Source of the DNA: Haliotis rufescens
Lineage: Eukaryota
Length of the DNA: 64,000 nt
Direction: 5' to 3'
Assembly (NCBI RefSeq): GCF_023055435.1
Contig: NW_025963782.1
Coordinates: forward strand, 1 to 64,000
Under the pieces are notes generated by a model. The model was not told the DNA's origin. It ran no database searches and saw only the letters and a list, made by a program, of their open reading frames with translations. This document shows positions 8,229 through 58,285 of this stretch, one piece after another (within the stretch, counting starts at the first letter, position 1; each line of letters opens with the position of its first letter). The translations under genes were made by a program, and so were the position numbers.

Positions 8229-8291
8229 ACAAGTTTTACTTCCTTTATCATAAGCTTTAAAGTCCTTATCCAAAGAGTCGTCATGTCAGTC

Positions 8292-36193: not shown

Positions 36194-36339
36194 TCACGGA
36201 ATGAAACACATTACATTCTCAATATACTTCATTGTCTTCAGGTTGAAATGTACGTTGTTTTCCAGGTATATGACATCAATATTCTTTCCACTTATGTACA
36301 GGCTGTTGTTGTAGTAGACAAGGCTTCTAATGCTATCCC
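36194..36339 (-). pseudogene. 3'-terminal remnant of a fourth propeller-gene copy
   Basis: Encodes DSIRSLVYYNNSLYISGKNIDVIYLENNVHFNLKTMKYIENVMCFIP*, followed by its own diverged 3' flank (35910-36193). At 36335-36340 it is fused directly to the GC-rich repeat. Confidence 0.85.
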
Positions 36340-36800
36340 ACGCCACCTCAGGGACCCTTGGGTTCCCCCGCAACCTCAGGAAGCCCAGCTTTCTCAGCCA
36401 CCTCAGTGAGCCTAGGTTCCCCCGCCACCTCAGGAAGACCAGCTTCCTCAGCCGCCCAGGCACCCCAGGTTTCCCCGCCACCTCAGGGAGCCTATACTTC
36501 CCCCGCCACCTCAGGGGGCCCAGCTTTCTCAGCCACCTCAGGGAGACCAGATTTCTCCGCCACCCAAGATTTCCCCGCCACTACAGGGAGCCCAGTTTTT
36601 TCTGCCACCCCAGCTCTCCCTGCCACCTCAGGGAGCCAAGCTTTCTCCGCCATCTCAGGGACACAAGGTTCACCCGCCACTTCAGGGTCCCTTGCTTTTG
36701 CCTCGCCACCCCAGGGAGCCCAGGTCCTGCAAGCTCCCCAGGCAAAACAGGTTCCCCCGCCACCTCAAGGATCCCAGCTTTTCCCGCCACCCCGGTTCCC
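36335..36800. repeat. GC-rich repeat block B, distal part
   Basis: Appears identical to 45091-45556, with identical ORF translations. Confidence 0.9.
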
Positions 36801-37139
36801 TAACTATGGGTAATCATTCAGCAGAAGGAAATTCGGTAGACCAATACTACAACATGCATTACACATTACATTTCAATAATCATATGACATAGATACAAAC
36901 TAAGACTAAAAGTAATTCGGTTCTGGTGACAGCGGTGTTAAGGCTGCTAGGCACGAGCGCCCCCTGAAGTGTTCAACATACGTCCTACACTCTGTGTAAC
37001 AGTATTATTATCAAAATAATGGTCGCTCTATCTAAAAACTTGTGGCAATCTGTGTAACTGGTTGTGAGAATATTTCCATTTTCCTACGATGTCCCTGTGC
37101 TAAAGTATCGTGTAGGAGTCTCTTTTAAGACAGATGTGA

Positions 37140-38704
37140 TCACGGAATCAAACACATTACATTGTAACTATACTTCATTGTCTTCAGGTTGAAATGTACG
37201 TCGTTTTCCAGGTATATGACATCAATATTCTTTCCACTTATGTACAGGCTGTTGTTGTAGTAGACAAGGCTTCTAATGCTATCCCTGAAATCCAACATTT
37301 CCGTTGTAGTATTAGTTGATAAAGATCGTTTTATCACCTTCTTGTTGTCGCTGAAATATAGGACATTGTGAATAGTGTCAATAGTAACAGCAGAAACGTA
37401 ACGTGTCATATCTATCTGATGCAGCCTATTCCCATTATAGTCAACAGACCACAACCCATCATCAGTTTTACAGAAATAGATCATCTTCTTCCTGGAGTCT
37501 ACAGCAATGCCATTGGGAATGCCCGCTCCGCGATAATGCAAGTCCACAATGCCCCGAAAGTTTCTCCCAAATGTTGACATACGACTGATTGTCCACGTAG
37601 GATGGTATGTGGTAAGGAAGATGAGTCGTCTGTCAACATCGACTGTCATTCCGTACGATTGGATTCCCTCTCGTAGTGTTGTGACACCCGACACGTCCAG
37701 CCTTGAGGAGAAGATGCCTGGTGATGACATTCTACTGAATATCAGTCTCCTGGACACAGGCTCGTATGTTACAGCCTCAATGTATTTTGTGTAAAGATAA
37801 GGATACGTCTTTATGTCGTTTTTATCTATGGTAATCTGATGGGGATGTTGTGAGGAGACAGAGCCATATCGTACAACCAATATTCTCCTCTTGTCTTGAA
37901 ACTGTCGTGTTGTAGGTGTTGTAGCCACTGACCAGATGGAGTCGTGGGTGAGTAATGTGGTATTGGTTGTGTACTGTCAGCAATGGTCTGAAGGTCACGT
38001 GTCTTGTTGACGTAATTCAGATGAAAGTCTCCCAATGTCTGCACATCTTCTGCATGACTAGCGTTTATCACAATTAAGTCATTTCTCAAACGTACGTTCT
38101 GTTTTACAAGGGTCTCAACTGTTCGTTGGGTTTCATTAATCTGTGCTTGCACGTCAGCACTCTGTCGTATGACGATTAACACGTCATCTTTAAGTAAACT
38201 CACATCCTTTTCAACATGGGTCACGTGATGACGTGTCAGGTTCAACTCTTTCTTTAGTTCACTCACCTGCTGTTCACATGCATCTTTGTCTTTCACAGTG
38301 TCCGGTGGTTGTCGTGTTTTAGTCTGTCCGACCTCCCTCAACTGTCTTGTGAGGCTCAGTGTCTGTCGCTTCATCTGCTGATATCCACGCTTGAGGTGTC
38401 TAATCTGGGACATCACGTGAATGTTTACCGTGGCATCCAACGACTCTATTTGACTACGTATATAGGAAGGTACAATCTTCTCCGTCAAATCCGATCTCAG
38501 CAGTAACTCCAAAATGTCCATCTTGTTTATGACTCTCGTCTCCATTCCTGGAACGTCAGATTTCAAGTGGTTCAATTCCACTTTCAGATGGTTAATTTCT
38601 TTCTCAAGCAAACTCATCTGATTGACAACTGCTGCGATATGTTCGTGTCCATGAACCACAGATGAGGCTGCTACAAGCAGCACCAACACACACAAACTCG
38701 CCAT
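37140..38704 (-). pseudogene. Coiled-coil plus beta-propeller gene, copy 1, frameshifted in the linker
   Basis: Relative to copy 2, 13 nt (agtgaagggacgt on +) are missing at about 37931. This splits the gene into ORF 37826-38704 (signal peptide plus coiled coil) and ORF 37140-37928 (propeller). Both halves are otherwise open. Confidence 0.8.
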
Positions 38705-38967
38705 GTCAGATGGTAATTGTATAACTGTGTCAGAGTCGTGTAATCCAGAGCTAGGCGTCACGTGACTATCGCATTACATCTAACCTGGCAGCGGGCCAAA
38801 CGGAAACACTTGAATCTAACATGGCAACAGTCTCAGAGCAGTGTTCACTTGAGTTTCCCATCACGGGACCACACGGGTAGTATCCATGAAGTCAGCTCAC
38901 TGCCATTTTATCAATCAGTGGTGGGTGTACGGGATCGATCGATCCAATAACATGTTCATCTCAATGT

Positions 38968-39240
38968 ACCAAAAGACGTTAAAAGATGGTACTTGTTGTT
39001 AACCTGTCTGGCGCTCGGCATTAAGAGGCTAGAACAAGGACTGGTCGGTCGGAGTCAGTATACTGTGTCTGAGTGGGATATTCATGTTAAACTGCGGCAT
39101 GGTATCTCAGTGTGCTAGCACTATAAATCGGCATCAGTCCGGACTAGTACAAGCAGCCACACACACACACACGTGTATGCACGTCGCTATATAAGCGCCA
39201 TAATCTTGGACGCGACGTTAAACCCCATTTCACCTCACCT
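38968..39240 (+). mobile_element. 5'-truncated family B SINE upstream of propeller gene copy 1
   Basis: TSD tcatctcaatgt on both sides. The site is empty in copies 2 and 3 (about 47725 and 57724). Confidence 0.9.
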
Positions 39241-40341
39241 CATCTCAATGTGTGACCTGACAAATTTAAAGTTGATAATTTCATAACTTTAATGATAGCA
39301 CATGTTCTACAAATGCATGTATGTACGGATTTCAAGTTAAATAATACATAATATTACATAACTTCATTTGTTTAAAGTACTTAGTCATTTCACATTATAT
39401 CAGGAAATATAAAACTTCTAACACATGAGTATGTGAGTTGTTTAATCTACAATGTCACCAGAGGACGGGCCAGCGAAACGGGTTCAGTGTCAATTCCGAA
39501 ATACGTGAGTCCACTAAGTTTTCATCTTCGCATAATTTCAGAGACATGTGCATTTTCAAAACTAGCCTGTTACTGACAGGTTGCATGAAAAAAATTCTTG
39601 GAACAAAACCTTAGAATTAAACTATATTTTGTTTTAAAAACAAACTGTTATGACACGCTTCTTTTCAGTGGTGCTACACCCTTCATTGGCAGCTCACTAA
39701 CACCGCTACCAATCAATCAATCAATCACATTATTTCTTTTCAAAAACGGAGGCACGGGTGGCCAAGTCGTGTAAGGCGCCGCGATTCGCCATGCAGAGTT
39801 GCGTCACTTGGGCACATCAGATACCTATGATTGTGGGTTCGAATCCCGGTTTGCCCCGATTATGTTTCTAAGTTTGTCAGCACCATACCCATACCCCTGC
39901 TCGTGGGTTTCACCGAACTGGTAAGCGTCTGAGACCTGCATCACTTCGGGCTTTCCTCCCACATTAAGCTGACATGCCGCGATATAACCGGAATACTGTT
40001 AAAAGCGACGTTAAACCCAATTCACTCACTCTTTGAGGTGGTACAGGAGAAAAGGTTCTTTACATGATAATAATTTATGTTTAACAAGATGTCGGTTATG
40101 CTGTACAATCATTAGGTAACAGATTCAGCACACACATTAATACACTCATATCCAAGGTACTTTTTGCAAAGTATTTGATGATTTTTGCAAGGTTCTTGAT
40201 TTCTTTACATTTCTGGTACAAAACATTTCATGATGCTTGGAAATATATCTGAGATAAATTAGGATTTTGGTTCATGGAAAGCTTCATATTTATAACATAG
40301 ACGTAAATAGTCAGAGACTGCTAGTGGTATATACTGTATAA

Positions 40342-41340
40342 ATAGAGGTTATCACGCGAGTGTGTTTGGGGATGGTAAATATCCTGCATTAGGAATAAAC
40401 ATTGTATTTAGCGAGCTAAATACATAGTGTTTATTCCTAATACAGGATATTTACCATCCCCAAACACACAAGCGTGATAACCTCTTTATCATATAATGTC
40501 ATTCTTTAATTCTGTGCTTCAAAATCGCTTTCCCTCTCTCACATACATAACCGAAACATTGCGAGTTTTTCTGGAATGCGCGCATTAATATTTATTACGT
40601 CACAGGGTAAGTGATGTGTCAGTCGGAAAGTGACAGTAGCCAATATAGTTCCAACTGAAATCTGTTTCTTATACAGTGGCGAAGCAACATATACGCAAAA
40701 CAACAATTGTTTTTAATCGCCTTTCGCGGCAATCAATCTGTCTGTCCGCTAGAGTAACTGCCCTTTGTCAAAGGGAAGCTACTCTAACCTTAGTCTATGA
40801 GACGTCACGGCCACGGTCAGTCGTTGTTGACAGTCGGTCTGTCCTGTCATAACGTTAAGAAGTGTAGTCAGATGTACACACAGCGACAAAACGAAACAAG
40901 GTAACAATTCAAACACATTTCGGACAAATCCAACTATTTTAATTTGGGGAGAAGGTTTCAAGCCGCAGAGGTCTACAAGCACTGATATGGCTACTGATCC
41001 CGCTTGGCTAGGCCTCGTGCCCTCGCAAAATGTTTCGAAATTTATATCTCTAAAGTTGCCCAAACTCATAAAATGCCTTAGTTTATCACAGTTAGAGACT
41101 GATTTCAGTATATTAGACTGTTCTTTTGATAATGATAGCAATTATCCCTGTAGTTTATCCAGATTCCCGATGGTTAATTCTGACTCGATCGCCGAATGAT
41201 GAGGGCGACGCCATGTTTGTTTATAAACAGTCCCTACTTGACCTTTGATATTTGCATCTCTATCCGCATATGACCCCAACGGATATCGTTTTTATCCGTT
41301 GGCTTTATCCTGCCGAGAAACCTACCCATTATATGATAAA
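40342..41340. mobile_element. About 1-kb non-autonomous hairpin-ended DNA element (Crypton-like or Helentron-like, unresolved)
   Basis: Palindrome of about 140 bp at 40343-40485. Internal ttatcatataatg is inverted against the terminal cattatatgataa. Independent insertion site. Confidence 0.8.
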
Positions 41341-41938
41341 ACTATATACCTTTCCTCACAGGAAAGTTAAAGATCATCTACTGACGTATTAATCAATAAA
41401 CCATTAATGCGCGACGGCGAGATAGCGTATGATAAACGGTTTGGGCAACGTTGAAACGTGTTTCAATTGCCATTATAAATCCGCATTTCGGTTATTAGTT
41501 AAACGATTGTATTTGTAAAACAAACAACATATTCAAGGTCAGAAAAATGCATGGGTGAGTGAGTGAGTTTTGGTTTAACTCCGCTTTTAACAGTATTCCA
41601 GTCATATCGAGGCGTGTCAGCTTAATGTGGGAGGAAAGCCCGACGTGATACAGGTCTCAGACGTTTACCACTTCGGTCCAAAACCACGAGCACGGGTATG
41701 GTGCTGACAAACCTAAAAACATAATCGAGGCGAACCGGGATTTCTGGCGTGCCCAAGGGACGCAACTCTGCACAGGGAATAGCGACGCCTTAGACGACTG
41801 GGCCACCCGTGCCCTCAGAAGATTGCATGGAGAAACCTCGGTGAACGATAAAAACGATATACAAGATATGAATGAACACCCTTGTCTGTGTTATTCCATC
41901 ATTGACAAAGGCCAATTGTGGCAAGCGACTGGTGTGTG

Positions 41939-41972
<34 letters not shown>

Positions 41973-43709: not shown

Positions 43710-45556
43710 GCAGGTTCAACCGCCACCTCAGAGAGACCAGGTTCCCTCGCCATCTCAAGGAGCACAGATTCCCCCGCCGCTCCAGGGACTGCAGGTTCCC
43801 CTGCGACCTTAGGGAGCCCAGGTTCCCCTGCCAAACTAGGGAGCCCAGGTTTCCCCGCCACCTCAGGGAAGCCAAGGTTCCCCCGACAACTCAAGGAGCA
43901 CAGATTCCCCCGCCGCTCCAGGGACTGCGAGTCCCCTGCGACCTCAGGGAGCCCAGGTTCCCTCGCCAAACTAGGGAGTCCATGTTCCCGGCCACCCAAG
44001 GGACCACCGATTCCAACGCCATCCCAGGGAGTCCAGATTCCCCCGCCACCCAAGGGAGCCAAGGTTTCCCCGCCACCCAAGGGAGCCCAGGTTCCCCCGG
44101 CACCACAGGGAGCCCAGGTCCCCCGCCACCCAAGGGAGCCCAGGTTTCCCCGCCACCTCAGGGAAGCCAAGGTTCCCCCGCCGCCCCAGCTTCCCCCGCT
44201 AACTCAGGGAGCCCAGGTTCACCCGCCACCCCAGGTACCCCAGGCACCCCAGGTTCACCCCCCTGCTCGGGCACCCCAGGTTCACCCGCCTCCCCAGGTT
44301 CACCCGCCACCCCAGGCACCCCAGGTTCACCCACCACCCCAGGCACCCCAGGTTCACCCGCCTCCCCAGGTTCACCCGCCACCCCAGGCACCCCAGGTTC
44401 ACCCGCCACCCCAGACACCCCAGGTTCACCCGCCTCCCCAGGTTCACCCGCCACCCCAGGCACCCCAGGTTCACCCACCACCCCAGGCACCCCAGGTTCA
44501 CCCGCCTCCCCAGGTTCACCCGCCACCCCAGGCACCCGAGATTCACCCGCCACCCCAGGGACCCCAGGTTCAGCCGCCTCCCCAGGCGCCCCAGGCACCC
44601 CAGGTTCACCCGCCACCCCAGGCACCCCAGGCACCCTAGGCACCCCAGGTTCACCCGCCACCCCAGGTACCCCAGGTTCAGCCGCCTCCCAAGGCGCCCC
44701 AGGCACCCCAGGTTCACCCGCCACCCCAGGCGCCCCAGGCACCCCAGGCTCACCCGCCACCCCAGGCACCCCAGGTTTACCCGCCACCTCAGGGAGCCCA
44801 GGTTCACCCGCCACCCCAGGCACCCCAGGTTCCTCCGCCACCCCAGGGAGCCCAGGTTCCCCCGCCTCCCCAGGTTCACCCGCCACCTCAGGGAACCCAG
44901 CTTTTCCCACATCCCAGGGAGCCCAGGATCCCACGCCACCTCAGGGACCCTTGGGTTCACCCGCCACCTTAGGGAGCCCATCTTTCCCCAAACCTCTTCG
45001 GGAGCCCAGCTTTCTCAGCCACCACAGGCACCCTTGGTTCACCCGCCACCTCAGGGAACCCAGGTTTTCCCACATCCCGGGGAGCCCAGGATCCCACGCC
45101 ACCTCAGGGACCCTTGGGTTCCCCCGCAACCTCAGGAAGCCCAGCTTTCTCAGCCACCTCAGTGAGCCTAGGTTCCCCCGCCACCTCAGGAAGACCAGCT
45201 TCCTCAGCCGCCCAGGCACCCCAGGTTTCCCCGCCACCTCAGGGAGCCTATACTTCCCCCGCCACCTCAGGGGGCCCAGCTTTCTCAGCCACCTCAGGGA
45301 GACCAGATTTCTCCGCCACCCAAGATTTCCCCGCCACTACAGGGAGCCCAGTTTTTTCTGCCACCCCAGCTCTCCCTGCCACCTCAGGGAGCCAAGCTTT
45401 CTCCGCCATCTCAGGGACACAAGGTTCACCCGCCACTTCAGGGTCCCTTGCTTTTGCCTCGCCACCCCAGGGAGCCCAGGTCCTGCAAGCTCCCCAGGCA
45501 AAACAGGTTCCCCCGCCACCTCAAGGATCCCAGCTTTTCCCGCCACCCCGGTTCCC
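43710..45556. repeat. Fused GC-rich repeat blocks A and B (27-bp unit with 9-bp sub-periodicity)
   Basis: 43710-44130 matches block A (50110 onward) and 44130-45556 matches block B (54090 onward). The core is built from ccaggcacc, ccaggttca and cccgccacc 9-mers. Confidence 0.9.
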
Positions 45557-45895
45557 TAACTATGGGTAATCATTCAGCAGAAGGAAATTCGGTAGACCAA
45601 TACTACAACATGCATTACACATTACATTTCAATAATCATATGACATAGATACAAACTAAGACTAAAAGTAATTCGGTTCTGGTGACAGCGGTGTTAAGGC
45701 TGCTAGGCACGAGCGCCCCCTGAAGTGTTCAACATACGTCCTACACTCTGTGTAACAGTATTATTATCAAAATAATGGTCGCTCTATCTAAAAACTTGTG
45801 GCAATCTGTGTAACTGGTTGTGAGAATATTTCCATTTTCCTACGATGTCCCTGTGCTAAAGTATCGTGTAGGAGTCTCTTTTAAGACAGATGTGA

Positions 45896-47473
45896 TCACG
45901 GAATCAAACACATTACATTGTAACTATACTTCATTGTCTTCAGGTTGAAATGTACGTCGTTTTCCAGGTATATGACATCAATATTCTTTCCACTTATGTA
46001 CAGGCTGTTGTTGTAGTAGACAAGGCTTCTTATCCTATCACTGAATTCCAACATTTCCGTTGTAGTATTAGTTGATAAAGATCGCTTTATCACCTTCTTG
46101 TTGTCGCTGAAATATAGGACATCGTGAATAGTGTCAATAGTAACAGCAATAACGTCACGTCTCATGTCTATCTGATGCAGCCTATTCCCATTATAATCAA
46201 CAGACCACAACCCATCATGATTTTTACAGAAATAGATCATCTTCTTCCTGGAGTCTACAGCAAGACCTAGGGGACTGTTTGTTCCGTGATTACGCAAGTC
46301 CACAATGCCCTGAAAGTTTCTCCCAAATGTGGACATACGACTGATTGTCTTCGTCGGAAGGTATGTAGTAAGGAAGATGAGTCGTCTGTCAACATCGACT
46401 GTCATTCCGTACGACGTGATTCCCTCTCGTAGTGTTGTGACACCCGACACGTCCAGCCTTGAAGAGAAGATGCCACGTGGTGAATTTCTACTGAAAATCA
46501 GTCTCCTGGACACAGGCTCGTATGTTACAGCCTCAACGTGTGATGTATGCAGATAAGGATACGTCTTCATGTCGTTTTTATCTATGGTAATCTGATGGGG
46601 ATGTTGTAAGGAGCCAGAGTAAAGTTGTACCACCAATATTCTCGTCTTGTCTTGAAACTGCCGTGTTGTAGGTGTTGTAGCCACTGAAGTGAAGGGACGT
46701 CCAGATGGAGTCGTGGGTGAGTAATGTGGTATTGGTTGTGTTCTGTCAGCATTGGTCTGAAGGTCACGTGTCTTGTTATCGTAATTCAGATGAAAGTCTC
46801 CTAATGTCTGCACATCTTCTGCATGACTGGCGTTAATCACAATCAAGTCATTTCTTAAACGTACATTTTGTTTTACAAGGGTCTCAACTGTTCGTTGGGT
46901 TTCATTAATCTGTGCGTGCACGTCAGCACTCTGTCGTATGGCGAGTAACACGTCATTTTTTACTAAACTCACATCCTTTTCAACATGGGTCACGTGATGG
47001 CGTGTCAGGTTCAACTCTGTCTTTAGTTCACTCACCTGCTGTTCACATGCATCTTTGTCTTTCACAGTGTCCAGTGGTTGTCTTGTTTTAGTCTGTCCGA
47101 CCTCCCTCAACTGTCTTGTGAGACTCAGTGTCTGTCGCTTCATCTGCTGATATCCACGCTTGAGGTGTCTAATCTGGGACATCACGTGACTGTTTACCGT
47201 GTCATCCAACGACTCTATTTGACTACGCATATAGGAAGGTACAATCTTCTCCGTCAAATCCGATCTCAGCAGTAACTCAAAAATGTCCATCTTATTTATG
47301 ACTCTCGTCTCCATTCCTGGAACGTCAGATTTCAAGTGGTTCAGTTCCACTTTCAGATGGTTAATTTCTTGCTCAAGCAAACTCATCTGATTGACAACTG
47401 CTGCGATATTTTCGTGTCCATGAACCACAGATGACGCTGCTACAAGCAGCACCAACACACACAAACTCGCCAT
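45896..47473 (-). CDS. Intronless secreted protein: signal peptide, coiled coil, Thr/Pro linker, degenerate YWTD/LDLR-class-B-like beta-propeller (copy 2, intact, 525 aa)
   Basis: ATG at 47473 starts MASLCVLVLLVAASSVVHG, followed by heptad-rich helices and a TTPSG...TTPTT linker. Blade repeats include AVTYEPVSRRLIFS, GMTVDVDRRLIFLT, PLGLAVDSRKKMIYFC and AVTIDTIHDVLYFSD. No transmembrane segment is visible. Confidence 0.85.
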   Translation of the reverse strand: MASLCVLVLLVAASSVVHGHENIAAVVNQMSLLEQEINHLKVELNHLKSDVPGMETRVINKMDIFELLLRSDLTEKIVPSYMRSQIESLDDTVNSHVMSQIRHLKRGYQQMKRQTLSLTRQLREVGQTKTRQPLDTVKDKDACEQQVSELKTELNLTRHHVTHVEKDVSLVKNDVLLAIRQSADVHAQINETQRTVETLVKQNVRLRNDLIVINASHAEDVQTLGDFHLNYDNKTRDLQTNADRTQPIPHYSPTTPSGRPFTSVATTPTTRQFQDKTRILVVQLYSGSLQHPHQITIDKNDMKTYPYLHTSHVEAVTYEPVSRRLIFSRNSPRGIFSSRLDVSGVTTLREGITSYGMTVDVDRRLIFLTTYLPTKTISRMSTFGRNFQGIVDLRNHGTNSPLGLAVDSRKKMIYFCKNHDGLWSVDYNGNRLHQIDMRRDVIAVTIDTIHDVLYFSDNKKVIKRSLSTNTTTEMLEFSDRIRSLVYYNNSLYISGKNIDVIYLENDVHFNLKTMKYSYNVMCLIP

Positions 47474-47525
47474 GTCAGCTGGTAATTGTATAACTGTGTC
47501 AGAGTCGTGTAGTCCGGAGCTAAGT

Positions 47526-47535
47526 GTCACGTGAC
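47526..47535. promoter_or_regulatory. Palindromic E-box GTCACGTGAC upstream of the propeller genes (also 38757-38766 and 57525-57534)
   Basis: Exact 10-bp palindrome about 53 nt upstream of the ATG in all three copies. Function is untested. Confidence 0.35.
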
Positions 47536-48168
47536 TATCGCATTACATCTAACCTGGCAGCGGGCCAAACGGAAACACTTGAATCTAACATGGCAACAGT
47601 CTCAGAGCAGTGTTCACTTGAGTTTCCCATCACGTGACTACACGGGTAATATCCATGAAGTCAGCTCACTGCCATTTGATCAATCAGTGGTGGGTGTACA
47701 GGATCGATCGATCCAATAATACATTCATCTCAATGTGTGACCTGACAAATTTAAAGTTGATAATTTCAAAACTTAGAAATACCACATGTTCTACAAATAT
47801 ATATATATATATATGTACGGATTATTAGTTAAATGATGCATACTATTACACAACTTCATTTGTTTATAGTAATTAGTCATTTCCCACTATATCAGGAAAG
47901 ATATAACTTCTAACACATGAGAGTGTGAGTTGTTTAATCTGCAATGTCACCATAGCACGGGTCAGCGAAACAGTTCAGTATCAATTAGGAAGTACGTGAC
48001 TACGTTTTCCTCTTCGCATAATTTCAGAGACATGTGTATTGACAAAACCAGCCACTTACTCACAGGTTGCATGGAAAACAATTCTTTGATCGAAACCTTA
48101 GAATTATACTATATTTTGTTTTAAAAACAAACTATTATGACACGTTCCTCTTCCTTGTCACTGGCAGC

Positions 48169-48415
48169 NNNNNNNNNNNNNNNNNNNNNNNNNNNNNNNN
48201 NNNNNNNNNNNNNNNNNNNNNNNNNNNNNNNNNNNNNNNNNNNNNNNNNNNNNNNNNNNNNNNNNNNNNNNNNNNNNNNNNNNNNNNNNNNNNNNNNNNN
48301 NNNNNNNNNNNNNNNNNNNNNNNNNNNNNNNNNNNNNNNNNNNNNNNNNNNNNNNNNNNNNNNNNNNNNNNNNNNNNNNNNNNNNNNNNNNNNNNNNNNN
48401 NNNNNNNNNNNNNNN
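48169..48415. other. Assembly gap at a (caat)n repeat
   Basis: Run of N. The paralogous position 58222-58285 is a short (caat)n tract. Confidence 1.
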
Positions 48416-50109: not shown

Positions 50110-51260
50110 GCGTGACGCAGCAGGTTCAACCGCCATCTCAGAGAGACCAGGTTCCCCCGCCATCTCAAGGAGCATAGATTCCCCCGCCGTTCCAGGGACT
50201 GCAGGTTCCCCTGCGACCTCAGGGAGCCCAGGTTCCCCCGCCAAACTAGGGAGCCCATGTTCCCCGCCACCCAAGGGACCACCGATTCCAACGCCATCCC
50301 AGGGAGTCCAGATTCCCCCGCCACCCAAGGGAGCCAAGGTTCCCCCGCCATCTCAAGGAGCACAGATTCCCCCCGCCGCTCCAGGGACTGCAGGTTCCCC
50401 TGCGACCTCAGGGAGCCCAGGTTCCCCCGCCAAACTAGGGAGCCCATGTTCCCCGCCACCCAAGGGACCACCGATTCCAACGCCATCCCAGGGAGTCCAG
50501 ATTCCCCCGCCACCCAAGGGAGCCAAGGTTCCCCCGCCATCTCAAGGAGCACAGATTCCCCCCGCCGCTCCAGGGACTGCAGGTTCCCCTCCGACCTCAA
50601 CTAGGGAGTCCAGATTCCCCCGCCACCCAAGGGAGCCCATGTTGCCCCGCCTCCCGAGGGTGCCAAGGTTACCCAGCCTCCCCAGGGAGCCCAGGTTTTC
50701 CTCCCACCTCAGGGAACACAGGTTCCCCCACCATCCCAGGGAGTCCAGATTCTCCCGCCGACCCAGGAAGCCCAGATGACCCCGGCTCTCCAGGGAGCCC
50801 ATGTTGCCCTGCCGCCTCAGGGAGCCCAAGTTCCACCACCGACCCTGTTAGCCGAAGTTTCCCCGCCGACCCAGGGAGCCCAGGTTCCCCAGGGAGCCAG
50901 GGAGCCCCTATTGCCCCGCCGCTCCAGGGGCCCTGGTTACCCCACCTCCCCATGGAACCCATGTTCCCCAGGGAGAAGAGATTCTCCCGCCTCCCCATGG
51001 AGCCCAGGTTCCCCCGCCGTCCCATGGAGTCAAGGTTCCCCCGCCATCTCAAGGACCACAGATTCCTCCGCCGCTCCAGGCAGCCCAGGTTCCCCCGCCA
51101 CCTCAGGGAAACCACGTTCACCTGCTACCCCAGGGAGCCAAGGTTCCCCCGCCATCCAAGGACCACAGATTCCCCCACCACCCCAGTAAGCCCAGGGTCC
51201 CCCACCAACCCAGGGACCACAGATTTACCCGCCGCTCCAGGGACCACAGATTCCAACGTC
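50110..51260. repeat. GC-rich repeat block A (second copy at 59935-61085)
   Basis: Degenerate 27-bp units with an internal duplication of about 190 bp. Confidence 0.9.
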
Positions 51261-52345
51261 ATCCCAATGGAGCCGAGGCCACCCGTAAAACCCTTAAAAA
51301 CATATTATGTATATAATGTTGTTACAGCAGGTTACAAAAAGAATGTTCGTATTTAAAGCAATTAGATTAATCTTTGAAGAGATAAAAATCAGGTAAACAT
51401 ATATTAATGTTCAGGTCTCCATATTTCCTATAATCCCCGTCAGCATGTATTTACAACGTGTGGGCGATTGATAAAATGTTACTTTTGGAACCAACTTGAC
51501 CCGTGAAGATCCGGGTAGAGAATAGGTCTTCAGCAACCAATGTTTGCGGTAAAAGACGACTTTCCTTGTCGCCGTCATGTAGCTGGAATATTGCTGAGTG
51601 CGGCGTTAAACAAAACACAAACAGACAAATAATTACGGTTAGGTAGTATTAAACTGAAAATGCCACTGAAAATATTGATATGTTATCTATCACCTGTATT
51701 TTCCATGTTTTTTACTTGTATTTTGCAAATTGTATTCATCAGCTATCAATAGGGATCGCGAAACAAGCCTTTATTAAAGTCTAGTAAACCATACAAGCTC
51801 TGTAAATATACTATTGCAAATTAGTAAATACTGAGAAGAAGATTCTTTGAAAAGCGGATAGTAATCTTTAATAACTGATAAGTAAACTGCACTAGTCTAC
51901 GATAGACCACATGTACTAGTCTAATTAGCAAATATTTACTTACTGATCGGTAAAATCTCGTAACAACCTTGAGTCTGATTGGGCAGTGAATTTCGCTAAG
52001 TAACTTGGTAACTGTTTCTGTCAGTGAGTAGTTATTTGGAGAACGTTCATTGACATTGACTACACAGCAGGGGCGGTGTAATGATGTGACGGTGGCCAAG
52101 CAGCAATTATTCCAGATTATTCATTTTATATCAACATTCTATCGCGAACAATTCGCCGAAGTGAAGAGATAATTCGTCTGGAATCAAAAGATCCAGGCGA
52201 CTTCATGGGCGGTGGGGTAGCCTAGTAGGCCTTCACTCGTCATATCGAAGACCCAGGTTCGATTCCCCACATAGATACAATGTGTGAAGCCCATTCTGGT
52301 GTCCCCAGTCGTGATTTTGCTAAATATTGTTAAAAGCAGCGTAAA

Positions 52346-53322
52346 TAGAGGTTATCACGCGAGTGTGTTTGGGGATGGTAAATATCCTGCATTAGGATTA
52401 CATAGTGTTTATTCCTAATACAGGATATTTATCATCCCCAAACACACCAGCGTGATAACCTCTTTATCATATAATGTCATTCTTTAATTCTGCGCTTCAA
52501 AATCGCTTTCCCTCTCACAAACATTACCGAAACATTGCGAGTTTCCCTGGAATGCGCGCATTAATATGTATTACGTCACAGGGTAAGTGATGTGTCAGTC
52601 GGACAGTGACAGTAGCCAATATAGTTCCAACTGAAATCTGTTTCTTATACAGTGGCGAAGCAACATATACGCAAAACAACAATTGTTTTTAATTGCCTTT
52701 CGCGGCAATCCATCGGTCTGTCCGCTAGAGTAACTGCCCTTCGTCAAAGGGAAGCTACTCTAACCCTAGTCTATGAGACGTCACGGCCATGGTCAGACGT
52801 TGTTGGCAGTCGGTCTGTCCTGTCATAACGTTAAGAAGTGTAGTCAGATGTACACAGAGCGAAAAAACGAAACAAGGTAACAATTCAAACATATTTCGGC
52901 CAAATCCAACCATTTCAATTTGTGGAGAAGGTTTCAAGCCGCAGAGGTCTACCAGTCATGGCTACTGATCCCGCTTGGCTAGGCCTCGTGCTCTCGCAAA
53001 ATTGTTTCGAAATTTATATCTCCGAAGTTGCCAAAACTTATAAAATGCCTTAGCTGCGTCACAGTAAGACACTGATTTTCAGTATATTAGACTGTCCTTT
53101 TGATAATGAAAGCAATTATCTCTGTAGTTTATCCAGATTCACGATGGTTAAATCTGACTCGATCGTCGAATGACGAGGGCGACGCCATGTTTGTTTATAA
53201 ACAGGTAAAGTAGTCCCTACTTGACCTTTGATATTTGCATCTCTATCCGCATATGACCCCAACGGATATCGTTTTTATCCGTTGGCTTTATCCTGCCGAG
53301 AAACCTACCCATTATATGATAA
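52346..53322. mobile_element. Same 1-kb element nested in a SINE tail (duplicated with the unit at 62169-63145)
   Basis: The empty site is visible at 34623-34650 (gcagcgtaaaaccatactcactcacgc). Confidence 0.88.
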
Positions 53323-54044
53323 AACCATATTCACTCACGCTCTGATTTAAACCATGTTTTGATTGAAACATAATTCCTCTATAATTTTGTATAAAGACAT
53401 GTAGTTGCGTCAGTTTCAAAATGCACGTTCAGAATGACCCGTAAAATCAGAATCAACTGCAAGAACAATGGCGTGATGTCATCATGATAGATTAAGGAAA
53501 GGGTTTGTCGTTTTTATTTACACTTGAGTCATCAAACACCGATAACCAATCACAGTTCTCGTCGGTATGTGTTTAAGTGAATGTTTATGGTCATGTATGC
53601 TGCAGTGGCATTACAGTTTTCCAAGGATCTCTGTGCCTTAATTAGGTCTGTTTTGGGTGCGGTCGGTTTTGACGCGGCTTTGAACAATATTTCAAATACA
53701 ATGTATACCCATTTGATTTTCAATGAGGTGTGTGTGTGTTGGGGGGTTGGGGGTGGGGGTTGGGGGTTGGGGGGTGGTGGTTGGTGGCCGGGGAGAGTTC
53801 TAATATAATAATCAAGCCCTTATTTTGCCGAAAATATGTATTGTGCCCTTTTCTTGAATAATCGAGAAAGAAATCAAAATCCACCCACCCCTCTTTGAAA
53901 ATCAAATGGTTGCTCTCTAATAACTCAATATAAATCAGGATACTTCCAAAGTAGTCACGAATGTCGTTTCTCGCAAATTATCATTCTCATTCTGTATTAG
54001 CAATTAATTCTCTTTTTTGGATCGCCTGTGTACAGTATTATTAT

Positions 54045-55556
54045 GACCCTCGCCACCTTAGAGAGCCCAGCTTACCCCGCAACCTCAGGGAGCCCAGGTT
54101 CCCCCGCCACCTCAGGGAAGCCAAGGTTCCCCCGCCGCCCCAGCTTCCCCCGCTAACTCAGGGAGCCCAGGTTCACCCGCCACCCCAGGCACCTCAGTTT
54201 AACCCGCCTCCCTTGGTTCACCCGCCACCCAAGGTACCCCAGGCACCCCAGGTTCACCCGCCTGCTCAGGCACCCCAGGATCACCCGCCTCCCCAGGTTC
54301 ACCCGCCACCCCAGGCACCCTAGGTTCACCCGCCACCCCAGGCACCCTAGGCACCCCAGGTTCACCCGCCACGCCAGGCGCCCCAGGCACCCCAGGTTCA
54401 CCCGCCACCCCAGGCACCCCAGGTTCACCCGCCACCCCAGGTACCCCAGGTTCAGCCGTCACCTCAGGGAGCCCAGGTTCCCCCGTCTGCCCAGGTTCAC
54501 CAGACACCCCAGACACCCCAGGTTCACCCACCACCCCAGGCACCCCAGGTTCACCCGCCTCCCCAGGTTCACCCGCCACCCCAGGCACCCCAGGTTCACC
54601 CGCCACCCCAGGAACCCCAGGTTCACCCGCCTCCCCAGGCGCCCCAGGCACCCTAGGTTCACCCGCCACCCCAGGCACCCTAGGCACCCCAGGTTCACCC
54701 GCCACGCCAGGCGCCCCAGGCACCCCAGGTTCACCCGCCACCCCAGGGACCCCAGGTTCACCCGCCACCCCAGGTACCCCAGGTTCAGCCGCCTCCCAAG
54801 GCGCCCCAGGCACCCCAGGTTCACCCGCCACCCCAGGCACCCCAGGTTCCTCCGCCACCCCAGGGAGCCCAGGTTCACCCGCCACCTCAGGGAACCCAGC
54901 TTTTCCCACATCCCAGGGAGCCCAGGATCCCACGCCACCTCAGGGACCCTTGGGTTCACCCGCCACCTTAGGGAGCCCATCTTTCCCCAAACCTCTTAGG
55001 GAGCCCAGCTTTCTCAGCCACCACAGGCACCCTTGGTTCACCCGCCACTTCAGGGAACCCAGGTTTTCCCACATCCCGGGGAGCCCAGGATCCCACGCCA
55101 CCTCAGGGACCCTTGGGTTTCCCCGCCACCTCAGTGAGCCCAGCTTTCTCAGCCACCTCAGGGAGCCTAGGTTCCCCCGCCACCTCAGGGAGACCAGCTT
55201 CCTCAGCCGCCCAGGCACCCCAGGCTTCCCCGCCACCTCAGGGAGCCTATACTTCCCCCGCCACCTCAGGGGGCCAGCTTTTTCAGCCACCTCAGGGAGA
55301 CCAGATTTCTCCGCCACCCAAGATTTCCCCGCCACTACAGGGAGCCCAGCTTTTTCTGCCACCCCAGCTTTCCCTGCCACCTCAGGGAGCCAAGCTTTCT
55401 CCGCCATCTCAGGGACACAAGGTTCACCCGCCACTTCAGGGTCCCTTGCTTTTGCCTCGCCACCCCAGGGAGCCCAGGTCCTGCAAGCTCCCCAGGCAAA
55501 ACAGGTTCCCCCGCCACCTCAGGGATCCCAGCTTTTTACCGCATCCCCGGTTCCCT
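54045..55556. repeat. GC-rich repeat block B (next copy begins at about 63870)
   Basis: 9/27-bp periodic sequence. The 9-mer core differs in order and length from the 44.2-44.9 kb copy. Confidence 0.9.
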
Positions 55557-55894
55557 AACTATGGGTAATCATTCAGCAGAAGGAAATTCGGTTTACCAAT
55601 ACTACAACATACAATACACATTACATTTCAATAAACATATGACATAGATACAAACTAAGACTAAAAGTAATTCGGTTCTGGTGGCAGCGGTGTTAAGGCT
55701 GCTAGGCACGAGCGCCCCCTGAAGTGTTCAACATACGTCCTACACTCTGTGTAACAGTATTATTATCAAAATAATGGTCGCTCTATCTAAAAACTTGTGG
55801 CCATCTGTGTAACTGGTTGTGAGAATATTTCCATTTTCCTACGATGTCCCTGTGCTAAAGTATCGTGTAGGAGTCTCTTTTAAGACAGATGTGA

Positions 55895-57472
55895 TCACGG
55901 AATCAAACACATTACATTGTAACTATACTTCATTGTCTTCAGGTTGAAATGTACGTCGTTTTCCAGGTATATGACATCAATATTCTTTCCACTTATGTAC
56001 AGGCTGTTGTTGTAGTAGACAAGGCTTCTAATCCTGTCACTAAATTCCATCATTTCCGTTGTAGTATTAGTTGATAAAGATCGCTTTATCACCTTCTTGT
56101 TGTCGCTGAAATATAGGACATCGTGAATAGTGTCAATAGTAACAGCAATAACGTCACGTCTCATGTCTATCTGATGCAGCCTATTCCCATTATAATCAAC
56201 AGACCACAACCCATCATGATTTTTACAGAAATAGATCATCTTCTTCCTGGAGTCTACAGCAATGCCACGGGGATTGGATGTTCCGTGATTACGTAAGTCC
56301 ACAATGCCCAGAAAGTTTCTCCCAAATGTGGACATACGACTGATTGTCTTCGTCGGATGGTATGTGGTAAGGAAGATGAGTCGTCTGTCAACATCGACTG
56401 TCATTCCGTACGACGTGATTCCCTCTCGTAGTGTTGTGACACCCGACACGTCCAGCCTTGAAGAGAAGATGCCATTTGGTGAATATCTACTGAATATCAG
56501 TCTCCTGGACACAGGCTCGTATGTAACAGCAACAACGTGTGATGTATGCAGATAAGGATACGTCTTCATGTCGTTTTTATCTATGGTAATCTGATGGGGA
56601 TGTTGTAAGGAGCCAGATATATATTGTACAACCAATATTCTCGTCTTGTCTTGAAACTGTCGTGTTGTAGGTGTTGTGGCCACTGACGTGAAGGGACGTC
56701 CAGATGGAGTCGTGGGTGTGTAATGTTGGATGGGTTGTGTTCTGTCAGCATTGGTCTGAAGGTCACGTGTCTTGTTATCGTAATTCAGATGAAAGTCTCC
56801 TAATGTCTGCACATCTTCTGCATGACTAGCGTTAATCACAATCAAGTCATTTCTTAAACGTACATTCTGTTTTACAAGGGTCTCAACTGTTCGTTGGGTT
56901 TCATTAATCTGTGCGTGCACGTCAGCACTCTGTCGTATGGCGAGTAACACGTCATTTTTTACTAAACTCACATCCTTTTCAACATGGGTCACGTGATGGC
57001 GTGTCAGGTTCAACTCTGTCTTTAGTTCACTCACCTGCTGTTCACATGCATCTTTGTCTTTCACAGTGTCCAGTGGTTGTCTTGTTTTAGTCTGTCCGAC
57101 CTCCCTCAACTGTCTAGTGAGACTCAGTGTCTGTCGCTTCATCTGCTGATATCCACGCTTGAGGTGTCTAATCTGGGACATTACGTGACTGTTTACCGTG
57201 TCATCCAACGACTCTATTTGACTACGCATATAGGAAGGTACAATCTTCTCCGTCAAATCCGATCTCAGCAGTAACTCCAAAATGTCCATCTTGTTGATGA
57301 CTCTCGTCTCCATTCCTGGAACGTCAGATTTCAAGTGGTTCAATTCCACTTTCAGGTGGTTAATTTCTTTCTCAAGCAAACTCATCTGATTGACAACTGC
57401 TGCGATATTTTCGTGTCCATGAACCACAGATGAGGCTGCTACAAGCAGCACCAACACACACAAACTCGCCAT
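55895..57472 (-). CDS. Coiled-coil plus beta-propeller secreted protein (copy 3, intact, 525 aa)
   Basis: Same architecture as copy 2, 9999 bp downstream. I count 16 amino-acid differences from copy 2. Confidence 0.85.
   Translation of the reverse strand: MASLCVLVLLVAASSVVHGHENIAAVVNQMSLLEKEINHLKVELNHLKSDVPGMETRVINKMDILELLLRSDLTEKIVPSYMRSQIESLDDTVNSHVMSQIRHLKRGYQQMKRQTLSLTRQLREVGQTKTRQPLDTVKDKDACEQQVSELKTELNLTRHHVTHVEKDVSLVKNDVLLAIRQSADVHAQINETQRTVETLVKQNVRLRNDLIVINASHAEDVQTLGDFHLNYDNKTRDLQTNADRTQPIQHYTPTTPSGRPFTSVATTPTTRQFQDKTRILVVQYISGSLQHPHQITIDKNDMKTYPYLHTSHVVAVTYEPVSRRLIFSRYSPNGIFSSRLDVSGVTTLREGITSYGMTVDVDRRLIFLTTYHPTKTISRMSTFGRNFLGIVDLRNHGTSNPRGIAVDSRKKMIYFCKNHDGLWSVDYNGNRLHQIDMRRDVIAVTIDTIHDVLYFSDNKKVIKRSLSTNTTTEMMEFSDRIRSLVYYNNSLYISGKNIDVIYLENDVHFNLKTMKYSYNVMCLIP

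Positions 57473-57791: not shown

Positions 57792-57795
<4 letters not shown>

Positions 57796-57868
<73 letters not shown>
57796..57868. repeat. (AT)n microsatellite, much shorter in unit 2 (about 47797-47814)
   Basis: Read directly from the sequence. Confidence 0.95.

Positions 57869-57873
<5 letters not shown>

Positions 57874-58235: not shown

Positions 58236-58285
<50 letters not shown>

What the first reader, a model, noticed from the sequence alone, without database searches (positions are those of the whole stretch)
36194..57472. Tandemly amplified secreted coiled-coil plus beta-propeller family: candidate diversified recognition proteins
Seen: at least four related single-exon genes (2 intact, 1 frameshifted, 1 remnant), with a further unit starting at the window edge. 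They encode a signal peptide, about 230 aa of coiled coil, a Thr/Pro linker and a degenerate YWTD-like propeller, with no TM, EGF or LDLa modules. Known: signal + coiled-coil or collagen stalk + globular head is the layout of oligomeric recognition proteins (C1qDC, fibrinogen-related proteins, collectins) and of olfactomedins. YWTD propellers normally sit in multi-domain receptors followed by an EGF module. Inference: this is a lineage-specific family of soluble oligomeric ligand binders under birth-and-death evolution, possibly in immunity or cell/gamete recognition. I do not recognise it as a named family.
Basis: partly seen in the sequence, partly recalled or inferred. Interest (0 to 1): 0.85.

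Follow-up and report, generated by a model that had tools for sequence, protein, structure and literature searches.

The report
Abalone secreted coiled-coil YWTD-propeller gene family
Red abalone carries roughly ninety or more intron-less genes, so far seen only in abalones, for a secreted protein with a coiled-coil stalk and a six-bladed propeller head; the copies differ mostly on one face of the propeller, as expected of a diversified binding-protein repertoire, but expression and ligands are untested.

Summary
The window (Haliotis rufescens, unplaced scaffold C4) has a ~10-kb tandem unit with two intact 525-aa minus-strand genes (45896-47473, 55895-57472). It also has a copy broken by a 13-nt deletion (37140-38704) and a 144-nt 3' remnant (36194-36337). 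A fifth copy lies just past the window edge.

The assembly gap (48169-48415) is intergenic. It lies 696 nt upstream of copy B, and its flanks are colinear with the next unit.

The protein has four parts: a signal peptide, about 210 aa of coiled coil, a Thr/Pro linker, and a six-bladed propeller (AF2 pLDDT >90). The best structural matches are YWTD propellers, led by nidogen (Z 31). No Pfam model passes its cutoff, and there is no EGF, LDLa or TM module. A trimer model of the stalk passed its controls (0.45 vs 0.01).

Genome-wide there are about 88 full-length paralogs in tandem arrays, plus fragments. Every named homolog is an "uncharacterized" Haliotis protein.

In two independent subfamilies, amino-acid change concentrates in the B-C and D-A loops of one propeller face (omega 1.2-1.35). 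The framework and stalk are under purifying selection (omega 0.35-0.65).

The best reading is a secreted, oligomeric, germline-diversified binder family. An immune role is plausible but unproven. The scan had already noted the top-face pattern on this stretch.

The parts
45896..47473 (-). Copy B: intact single-ORF gene, 525 aa plus stop.
   Evidence: ORF and translation. 100% query for tblastn. AF2 model me75887c561ed.
47417..47473 (-). Copy B signal peptide, residues 1-19 (MASLCVLVLLVAASSVVHG, V-H-G before the cut).
   Evidence: Read from the sequence. No signal-peptide predictor was run. The position is conserved across 20 paralogs.
46784..47416 (-). Copy B coiled-coil stalk, residues 20-230. 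It holds the nearly invariant HLKxGYxQMKRQ motif and Cys143.
   Evidence: AF2 gives long helices. There are weak coiled-coil Pfam hits only. The three-copy model is parallel and in register, with a 3-4 contact spacing over residues 22-231 and Cys143 in the core. ipSAE 0.45 vs best control 0.01. Omega 0.35.
46643..46783 (-). Copy B Thr/Ser/Pro-rich linker, residues 231-277. Its length varies among paralogs.
   Evidence: 43% S/T/P. Paralog L040 carries about six extra TTPVTTPRSPLL-like repeats here. Low pLDDT.
45899..46642 (-). Copy B six-bladed YWTD-type beta-propeller, residues 278-525. It ends in the conserved strand VMCLIP.
   Evidence: 24 strands, pLDDT >90. Foldseek top hits are all YWTD propellers. 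VIA: nidogen Z 31.1, rmsd 1.9 A over 239 residues. Profile vs LRP2 E 2e-33.
55895..57472 (-). Copy C: intact gene, 525 aa. It differs from B at 16 residues, 12 of them in the propeller.
37140..38704 (-). Copy A: a 13-nt deletion in the linker (between 37931 and 37932) shifts the frame. What is left encodes signal peptide plus stalk only (292 aa), or the copy is a pseudogene.
   Evidence: Pairwise alignment to B, 94.1% nt identity. tblastn splits it over two frames.
36194..36337 (-). Remnant: the last 144 nt of a CDS (residues 479-525 plus stop). It abuts a minisatellite fragment at 36341-36564.
   Evidence: The junction maps to unit position 45091, inside the minisatellite.
47474..47814 (-). 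5' flank of copy B. The stretch 47401-47814, which covers it, is 99.3% identical to the flank of copy C. Presumed promoter and 5' UTR.
   Evidence: Its function is inferred, not tested.
48169..48415 (.). Assembly gap (N), intergenic.
   Evidence: The flanks are colinear with the next unit. Not filled.
43711..45535 (-). GC-rich 27-bp minisatellite 3' of copy B. On the minus strand it reads as collagen-like G-X-Y. The same block lies at 54047-55535, 3' of copy C.
   Evidence: TRF. The longest uninterrupted G-X-Y run is 29 triplets on the minus strand vs 5 or fewer on plus. It occurs only in the C4/C605 subfamily.
50121..51278 (-). Second 27-bp minisatellite block of the unit. Its copy lies at 59944-61077.

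Best explanation
These are members of an abalone-specific multigene family of intron-less genes for secreted glycoproteins.

How it most likely works:
1. The signal peptide directs the protein out of the cell.
2. The ~210-residue N-terminal helix zips several chains into a parallel, in-register coiled coil. A core cysteine (Cys143) may lock the chains together.
3. A flexible, probably O-glycosylated Thr/Pro linker follows.
4. Each chain ends in a six-bladed YWTD-type propeller, so the oligomer presents two or more propeller heads.
5. Ligands bind on the face formed by the B-C and D-A loops. This is the ligand-binding (top) face in LRP6, LDLR and nidogen, as recalled from established knowledge of these propellers and not checked here.
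6. That face differs from paralog to paralog, while the framework and stalk are conserved.
7. Tandem duplication, loss, and probably exchange between copies keep generating and pruning variants.

The result would be a germline-encoded repertoire of multivalent binders, working like collectins, ficolins, FREPs, C1q-domain proteins or olfactomedins but with a different head.

Shown here: gene structure, fold, family size, lineage restriction and the selection pattern. Supported only by a model: self-association. Inferred: secretion, glycosylation, the ligand face and the biological role. Immune recognition is the leading guess.
For: **Copies and tandem unit.**

**Fold.**
- AF2 gives residues 278-525 at pLDDT >90 with 24 strands.
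- The Foldseek list is filled with LRP6, LDLR, LRP4, ApoER2, megalin and nidogen, E 1e-16 to 1e-13, about 263 columns.
- In VIA-wide the first 11 rows are all YWTD propellers (Z 23.7-31.1). Other six-bladed folds score 23.5 or below, and no olfactomedin is in the top 50.

**Sequence link.**
- The family profile hits LRP2 at E 2e-33 and LRP4 at 1e-5.
- Its distant hits in 1.84 billion representatives are multi-propeller proteins that carry Pfam Ldl_recept_b at E 1e-72 to 1e-98.

**Stalk.**
- Three copies of residues 20-240 score ipSAE 0.45 against a best control of 0.01. That mark was reached by 21 of 30 proteins solved as pairs of one chain and by 0 of 23 solved as single chains.
- The runs share at least 77% of contacts, and partner pLDDT is at least 68.
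- Contacts are in register (residue 196 with 196, 161 with 161).

**Family size and range.**
- About 88 full-length propeller matches (E <1e-100) lie in ORFs of about 440-650 aa.
- They sit in arrays on C57, C124, C312, C4, C605 and C68, with scattered copies on C334, C556 and C168, plus fragments.
- All named homologs are from Haliotis: rufescens, cracherodii, rubra and asinina.

**Selection, close subfamily (15 genes).**
- Omega: stalk 0.35, strands 0.65, bottom loops 0.66, top loops 1.2.
- Top-loop entropy vs the rest: Mann-Whitney p 4e-9.
- N:S ratio, top vs rest of propeller: Fisher p 0.012.

**Selection, second subfamily (14 genes from other contigs).**
- Top loops 1.35 vs about 0.5 elsewhere, Fisher p 1.7e-11.
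- 14 of the 15 most variable sites are in top loops, several at the same positions as in the first subfamily.

**Purifying selection.** It is significant in the stalk (p 5e-10 and 2e-27) and in the propeller framework (p 0.01 and 3e-11).

**Secretory-type features.** Six N-x-S/T sequons and three cysteines in the mature chain.
Against:
- The intact window copies have no matching protein in the public collections. RefSeq did not call them, which could mean low or no expression.
- Omega in the top loops is not significantly above 1 in the close subfamily (p 0.21) and only marginally so in the second (p 0.024). dS is also raised there. Relaxed constraint, multi-nucleotide changes or gene conversion could produce much of the pattern.
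- The selection counts used parsimony on a single tree, which ignores recombination.
- The top and bottom face labels come from strand order in the AF2 secondary structure and from convention, not from inspected coordinates.
- The trimer was imposed. The complex test was calibrated on two copies and mostly on microbes, and coiled coils are easy to model.
- No ligand is known.
- Some copy number may be inflated, because scaffold C4 mirrors part of C605.
Confidence: 0.6

Rival explanations
1. Same molecule, different job. The repertoire serves non-immune extracellular recognition, such as gamete or egg-coat interaction, larval settlement cues, or cell-cell and matrix adhesion. Abalone reproductive proteins are known to evolve fast.
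For: The fast-changing binding face and the restriction to Haliotis fit rapidly evolving reproductive proteins as well as immunity. No tissue data favour either.
Against: About 90 paralogs in several arrays is far more than known abalone gamete-recognition genes, which are single genes or a few. That comparison rests on my own knowledge. Such numbers are typical of invertebrate immune-type expansions.
Confidence: 0.15
2. A structural secreted protein of mucus, matrix or shell organic matrix. The coiled coil builds fibres or networks, and the loop variability reflects only weak constraint.
For: A long coiled coil with a mucin-like linker. Top-loop omega is about 1, not clearly above it.
Against: The variability is sharply confined to one face and recurs at the same positions in two subfamilies, while bottom loops of similar exposure are conserved. 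Structural proteins rarely need about 90 diverged heads.
Confidence: 0.1
3. Largely silent amplified ORFs. A young segmentally duplicated block carries gene copies that are mostly unexpressed or decaying, and part of the copy number is assembly redundancy (retained haplotigs).
For: - RefSeq lacks models for the window's intact copies.
- 3 of the 5 copies in or next to the window are broken.
- Window 5000-11305 recurs at 100% identity at C4:130979-137282. Related stretches lie at 95-100% identity at two other places on C4 and at 96-98% on C605.
Against: - Purifying selection on the stalk and framework holds across paralogs with tree-wide dS up to about 2.
- About 88 ORFs of about 500 codons remain open.
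- Homologs at 57% identity exist in H. asinina.
- The same gene spacing (10.0 and 8.7 kb) is seen on chromosome-scale C605. B-type and C-type lineages are each closer to C605 copies than to each other, so B and C are not haplotypes of one gene.
Confidence: 0.08
4. An enzyme of the six-bladed propeller clan (SGL, lactonase, arylesterase or strictosidine-synthase type) with a stalk.
For: Weak Pfam hits to Arylesterase, Lactonase and DUF5050 in a few paralogs. Such enzymes appear at Z 21-23.
Against: YWTD receptors score clearly higher (Z 24-31) and are the only significant sequence link. The invariant residues look like framework positions, though I did not look for a catalytic set as such. The face where such enzymes place their active site (from memory) is the hypervariable one.
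Confidence: 0.03

Closest known systems
YWTD (LDL-receptor class B) beta-propellers of nidogen G3, LDLR, ApoER2, LRP4, LRP5/6, LRP2 and ROS1/Sevenless
   Same: Six four-stranded blades with a hydrophobic-aromatic motif on strand 2. Best structural match: Z 31.1, rmsd 1.9 A over 239 residues. Significant profile match. In those proteins, ligands bind the face made by the 2-3 and 4-1 loops (from memory).
   Different: - 13-18% identity, and no Pfam PF00058 hit.
- No following EGF module, no LDLa repeats and no membrane anchor.
- One propeller on a coiled-coil stalk, instead of propellers inside a large mosaic receptor.
- Encoded by about 90 intron-less paralogs with a variable face.
Olfactomedin-domain proteins (myocilin, noelin/olfactomedin-1, gliomedin, sea-urchin amassin)
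   Same: Same layout: signal peptide, N-terminal coiled coil that oligomerises (with disulfides), then a linker and a C-terminal beta-propeller.
   Different: The OLF domain is a five-bladed propeller (from memory). Here there are six blades, no olfactomedin among the top 50 structural matches, and OLF Pfam E of 0.013 at best in 3 of 21 paralogs. This is an analogue, not a member.
Stalk-and-head soluble recognition proteins of invertebrate immunity (FREPs, ficolins, angiopoietin-like proteins, collectins, C1q-domain proteins)
   Same: An oligomerising stalk with a C-terminal globular binding head. Large lineage-specific tandem expansions with variable binding surfaces in molluscs (from memory).
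   Different: The head is a YWTD propeller, not a fibrinogen, C-type lectin or C1q domain. No binding or immune data exist for this family.
TRIM-NHL arrays noted elsewhere in this genome by the scan (unchecked notes, e.g. s1-813591)
   Same: Coiled coil plus six-bladed propeller, tandem arrays, and reported variability on the propeller top face.
   Different: Those are intracellular RING/B-box E3-ligase-type proteins with NHL propellers. This family has a signal peptide and no RING or B-box, and YWTD rows score well above NHL rows (Z 24-31 vs 21-23).

Membership tests
YWTD / LDL-receptor class B beta-propeller | Six blades of four antiparallel strands closing into a ring | tested here: met
   The AF2 model has 24 strands over residues 278-525 at pLDDT >90. 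The C-terminal strand completes the blade begun by the first three strands.
YWTD / LDL-receptor class B beta-propeller | Closest structural neighbours are YWTD propellers, ahead of other six-bladed classes | tested here: met
   The first 11 VIA rows are all YWTD propellers: nidogen, ApoER2, LRP4, LDLR and LRP6 at Z 24.7-31.1, and ROS1 at 23.7-24.2. TolB, NHL, SGL and Kelch score 23.5 or below. The Foldseek list is filled with YWTD entries.
YWTD / LDL-receptor class B beta-propeller | Sequence homology to class B repeats | tested here: met
   The family profile hits LRP2 at E 2e-33 (single domains at i-E 3e-4 to 8e-3) and LRP4 at 1e-5. Distant library hits carry PF00058 at E 1e-72 to 1e-98.
YWTD / LDL-receptor class B beta-propeller | Passes the curated Pfam model Ldl_recept_b (PF00058) | tested here: not met
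   No PF00058 hit, even at E up to 10, for any of 21 paralogs. The strand-2 motif is degenerate: LIFS, LIFL, IYFC, LYFS, LYIS.
YWTD / LDL-receptor class B beta-propeller | Propeller followed by an EGF module and embedded in a mosaic receptor | tested here: not met
   The protein ends at the last propeller strand (…VMCLIP). No EGF, LDLa or TM module was found.
Olfactomedin family | OLF domain (PF02191), five-bladed propeller | tested here: not met
   Best OLF E is 0.013, in 3 of 21 paralogs. The model has six blades. No OLF structure is among the top 50.
Olfactomedin family | Signal peptide, coiled coil and C-terminal propeller layout | tested here: met
Soluble oligomeric pattern-recognition proteins (functional class) | Self-association through the stalk | tested here: inconclusive
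   The three-copy model scores 0.45 vs a best control of 0.01 and passes the tool's mark. The stoichiometry was imposed, and this is a prediction only.
Soluble oligomeric pattern-recognition proteins (functional class) | Paralog diversity focused on the binding surface | tested here: met
   Top-face loops show omega 1.2 and 1.35, vs 0.5-0.66 in the rest of the propeller, in two subfamilies (Fisher p 0.012 and 1.7e-11).
Soluble oligomeric pattern-recognition proteins (functional class) | Expression in immune tissues, induction by challenge, binding to microbes or glycans | not testable with these tools
No paper was found.

The most novel reading that the evidence does not exclude
Abalones have built a previously unrecognised class of secreted immune receptors: a germline repertoire of about 100 coiled-coil oligomers. 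Their YWTD propeller heads would carry CDR-like hypervariable loops and bind diverse microbial or parasite surfaces. This would be a head domain not known from any soluble pattern-recognition family, evolved in parallel to FREPs, C1q-domain proteins and lamprey VLRs.
Probability: 0.3. Interest if true: 0.85.

Novelty: new variant of a known kind. Interest (0 to 1): 0.7.

Why it matters
Molluscs lack antibodies and rely on expanded germline families of soluble binders. The known families use fibrinogen, C1q, C-type lectin or Ig heads. A YWTD propeller on a coiled-coil stalk, free of EGF, LDLa or membrane modules, is an architecture I could not find described. This fold is otherwise known from endocytic and Wnt co-receptors and from nidogen.

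The family is large, confined to abalones among annotated genomes, mostly missing from RefSeq gene sets, and variable on exactly one propeller face. It is therefore a concrete, testable candidate for a recognition repertoire in a farmed and endangered animal group troubled by infectious disease (withering syndrome, vibriosis, herpesvirus). It also offers a natural scaffold showing how far the YWTD top face can be varied.

Tried and rejected
- **Pfam, single sequences.** Only sub-threshold coiled-coil matches. The propeller was not recognised.
- **phmmer vs PDB, single sequence.** Nothing useful. The profile was needed.
- **ESM Atlas.** No usable hit.
- **The search for homologous proteins with the alignment.** It returned the same five proteins. 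The stalk alone found only family members, so there is no sign that the stalk is shared with other heads.
- **Expression.** I did not try to get round either.
- **Literature.** Six searches on Haliotis or abalone with YWTD, propeller, coiled-coil, class B repeats and six LOC identifiers found nothing on this family.
- **The 525-aa plus-strand ORF 43982-45559.** It gave a Pfam Collagen hit. I rejected it as a gene: it is the antisense of a 27-bp minisatellite whose G-X-Y frame is on the minus strand.
- **B and C as stacked haplotypes.** Rejected. Each is closer to a different C605 copy than to the other, and C605 shows the same 10.0 and 8.7 kb spacing.
- **Olfactomedin membership.** Rejected.
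- **Enzyme reading.** Judged unlikely.
- **Positive selection.** Pairwise NG86 gave top-loop dN/dS of 0.96 with raised dS, so I do not claim proven positive selection.

Full report
**1. What is in the window**

ORF listing and translation show two intact minus-strand ORFs, 45896-47473 (copy B) and 55895-57472 (copy C). Each encodes 525 aa from MASLCVLVLLVAASSVVHG to …VMCLIP. tblastn of copy B against the window and a pairwise alignment add two more pieces.

- Copy A (37140-38704) is 94% identical to B. A 13-nt deletion in the linker, between 37931 and 37932, shifts the frame. What remains encodes a 292-aa signal-plus-stalk product at best.
- A remnant at 36194-36337 equals the last 144 nt of the CDS. 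It abuts a minisatellite fragment.

A fifth copy lies just outside the window (C4:65640-67211) and has ACG in place of the start codon.

Self-BLAST shows a ~10-kb tandem unit. 44040-47814 matches 54047-57813 at 93.7%, and 49197-54177 matches 59041-64000 at 98.3%.

**2. The gap**

The N run 48169-48415 lies in the spacer, 696 nt upstream of copy B's ATG. No family reading frame crosses it. Its two flanks align colinearly, in the same orientation, to the next unit. 47797-48168 matches 57852-58223 at 96.5%, and 48418-48683 matches 58253-58504 at 81%. This fits a continuous spacer but does not prove it. I did not fill in or look up the missing letters.

**3. Source**

The best database hit is a Haliotis rufescens RefSeq model at 98% identity (P0005). 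It lies on a contig of 1,046,183 bp, which is exactly the length of scaffold C4 that holds the window. Earlier follow-ups of this scan also call the genome red abalone. No protein identical to copies B or C is in the collections. RefSeq therefore has no model for them.

**4. The protein**

- *Pfam.* It recognises nothing above cutoff, only weak coiled-coil matches.
- *Alignment.* Twenty paralogs (A1) share a signal peptide and a helical region with a nearly invariant HLKxGYxQMKRQ motif. They also share a Thr/Pro linker of variable length and a ~251-aa C-terminal domain ending in C-L-I-P. One paralog has about six extra repeats in the linker.
- *AlphaFold2 on A1.* Residues 278-525 have pLDDT above 90 and form 24 strands, that is six four-stranded blades. 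The N-terminal half forms three long helices at low confidence, as expected for a lone coiled-coil chain.
- *Foldseek against the PDB.* The list is filled with YWTD propellers: LRP6, LDLR, LRP4, ApoER2, megalin and nidogen. E-values run from 1e-16 to 1e-13 over about 263 columns.
- *Foldseek-independent VIA search of 48,161 chains.* Nidogen ranks first at Z 31.1 (rmsd 1.9 A over 239 residues). ApoER2, LRP4, LDLR and LRP6 follow at Z 24.7-30.5, and ROS1 at 23.7-24.2. TolB, NHL, SGL and Kelch propellers score 23.5 or below, and no olfactomedin is in the top 50.
- *Sequence link.* A profile of the domain (A2) hits LRP2 at E 2e-33 and LRP4 at 1e-5. In 1.84 billion representatives its non-family hits are multi-propeller proteins. 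The three I scanned carry Pfam Ldl_recept_b at E 1e-72 to 1e-98.

The family fails the curated Pfam model and lacks the EGF module that normally follows such propellers.

**5. The stalk**

A three-copy model of residues 20-240 passed the tool's mark.

- ipSAE was 0.45 against a best control of 0.01.
- That mark was reached by 21 of 30 proteins solved as pairs of one chain and by 0 of 23 solved as single chains.
- The runs agree in at least 77% of contacts, and partner pLDDT is at least 68.
- Contacts follow a 3-4 spacing from residue 22 to 231 and are in register (residue 196 with 196). This describes a parallel coiled coil.
- Cys143 sits in the core. It is one of three cysteines in the mature chain.

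The trimer was my choice, so the test does not tell a dimer, trimer or tetramer apart. The tool's calibration used two copies. It is support, not proof.

**6. Family size and range**

Searching the whole assembly with the domain profile gives about 88 full-length propeller matches (E below 1e-100) in open frames of about 440-650 aa.

- They lie in tandem arrays on C57 (13.3-16.1 Mb, 40 or more genes), C124 (12.90-13.04 Mb), C312, C4, C605 and C68.
- Scattered copies lie on C334, C556 and C168.
- There are also about 20 fragments or stop-interrupted copies.
- A more distant set of propeller-only ORFs (258-298 aa) lies on C46, C445, C576 and C90.

Only 150 of 286 candidates were scored, so these are lower bounds.

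Of 30 cluster representatives looked up, all 17 that carry a name are "uncharacterized" proteins of H. rufescens, H. cracherodii, H. rubra or H. asinina. The rest are unnamed short contigs. The H. asinina homolog is 57% identical, so the family is older than the split of these species. One related H. rufescens protein joins a PAN domain to the same propeller.

**7. Are the copies real paralogs?**

Window 5000-11305 recurs at 100% identity at C4:130979-137282. Related stretches lie at 95-100% identity at two other places on C4 and at 96-98%, inverted, on C605:24.80-24.81 Mb. C4 thus holds a ~120-kb higher-order repeat and mirrors part of chromosome-scale C605. Some of this may be a retained haplotype, so genome-wide counts for this sub-locus could be inflated.

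Two observations argue that B and C are nevertheless separate genes.

- C605 itself has two arrays about 120 kb apart, with gene spacings of 10.0 and 8.7 kb. The window's spacings are 10.0 and 8.76 kb.
- B is closest to C605:24654607 (dS 0.039). C is closest to C605:24761360 and C605:24644625 (dS 0.03-0.04). B and C differ from each other at dS 0.075.

B and C are therefore distinct lineages, not two haplotypes of one gene.

**8. Selection**

For 15 intact close paralogs I counted changes on a tree.

| Region | Omega |
|---|---|
| Stalk | 0.35 |
| Propeller strands | 0.65 |
| A-B and C-D loops (one face) | 0.66 |
| B-C and D-A loops (opposite face) | 1.2 |

- Non-synonymous change per site is about four times higher in the B-C and D-A loops.
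- Entropy there exceeds the rest of the propeller (Mann-Whitney p 4e-9).
- The N:S ratio differs from the rest of the propeller (Fisher p 0.012).
- The most variable positions are 285, 312, 314, 333, 353, 355, 372, 399, 400, 402, 418, 419 and 442. All sit in or next to those loops.

A second subfamily of 14 paralogs from C57, C124 and C312 (66-87% identical) repeats the result. Omega is 1.35 in those loops against about 0.5 elsewhere (Fisher p 1.7e-11). Of the 15 most variable sites, 14 are in those loops, several at the same positions as in the first subfamily.

Purifying selection on the stalk and framework is significant in both sets. Omega above 1 is not significant in the first set (p 0.21) and marginal in the second (p 0.024). 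dS is also raised in these loops, so I claim focused diversification, not proven positive selection.

Loops alternate between the two faces in a four-stranded blade. By convention the 2-3 and 4-1 loops form the top face, where ligands bind in integrin, WD40 and YWTD propellers. That convention is established knowledge and was not checked on coordinates here. The scan's own first-stage note on this stretch (s1-807628) made the same claim, and these tests bear it out.

**9. Mechanism**

The most likely reading is a secreted glycoprotein. The parallel coiled coil gathers two or more chains, possibly disulfide-locked. A flexible mucin-like linker follows, and the YWTD heads bind ligands through a paralog-specific top face. 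Multivalency would supply avidity, and the array would supply diversity through duplication, loss and exchange.

This works like collectins, ficolins, FREPs, C1q-domain proteins and olfactomedins, but it belongs to none of those families. An immune role is the leading guess because of the family's size and pattern. Gamete or other extracellular recognition, a structural role, or mostly silent ORFs remain possible.

**10. What could not be done**

Transcription, transcript ends and the RefSeq splice could not be checked. Six literature searches found no description of the family.

**11. Verdict**

I rate it a new variant of a known kind: a stalk-and-head diversified binder with a new head and architecture. 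Interest is 0.7.

Noticed in passing
window 43711-45535, 54047-55535, 36341-36564; also 50121-51278 and 59944-61077: A GC-rich (about 62%) 27-bp minisatellite lies 3' of each gene copy. On the gene's own (minus) strand it reads as collagen-like G-X-Y, with up to 29 uninterrupted triplets (GEPGVPGVA…). The long plus-strand ORFs, including the 525-aa one at 43982-45559 that hits Pfam Collagen, are its antisense. It occurs only in the C4/C605 subfamily. Copies that carry it show no AATAAA or ATTAAA within 600 nt of the stop.
   Followed up: partly
window 35514-35876 (-) and 45528-45602 (-): The RefSeq model P0005 ("circumsporozoite protein-like", on this same scaffold) joins codons 1-167 of a family gene to sequence from the 3' flank and minisatellite. 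The result is a signal, half-stalk and collagen-ish product with no propeller. It is either a real alternative splice or an annotation artefact. It could not be tested without reads.
   Followed up: partly
window 5000-15000 vs C4:130979-140651, C4:251821-261525, C605:24803574-24813032: A ~120-kb higher-order repeat. Window 5000-11305 recurs at 100% identity at C4:130979-137282, related stretches lie at 95-100% elsewhere on C4, and at 96-98% inverted on C605. C4 (1.05 Mb, unplaced) may be partly a retained haplotype of C605:24.64-24.81 Mb.
   Followed up: partly
window 36194-36564: The gene remnant ends exactly where a minisatellite fragment begins, and the junction maps inside the minisatellite of the full unit (position 45091). 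This fits the scan's note that these repeat blocks are breakpoints of array rearrangement.
   Followed up: partly
window 40419-41347, 52399-53330, 62220-63153, 17924-18751: A ~930-bp element present once per tandem unit (93% identical between units), with a further copy at 86-87% outside the array. It is probably a dispersed repeat or transposon fragment.
   Followed up: no
window 19594-20961, 25625-26814, 32236-33160: Three further tandem-repeat arrays upstream of the gene array. Self-BLAST offsets suggest periods of about 77 bp, about 70 bp and about 59 bp. The 59-66-bp unit also recurs on C605 and elsewhere on C4.
   Followed up: no
window 1102-1641 (+): A 179-aa ORF with a …DGSHYG… motif that recalls PC-esterase or NXPE-type domains (from memory). 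It may be an exon of a neighbouring gene and was not scanned.
   Followed up: no
P0031 (H. rufescens LOC124131306); G000 C46, C445, C576, C90: The same propeller type occurs with other N-termini: a PAN/apple domain in P0031, and propeller-only ORFs of 258-298 aa in further tandem clusters. This points to a wider abalone superfamily of secreted YWTD-like heads.
   Followed up: partly
L040 (G000:C57:14383500-14387500), positions 780-2453: One paralog has its Thr/Pro linker expanded by about six tandem TTPVTTPRSPLL-like repeats, giving 558 aa. Stalk-to-head spacing therefore varies within the family.
   Followed up: no
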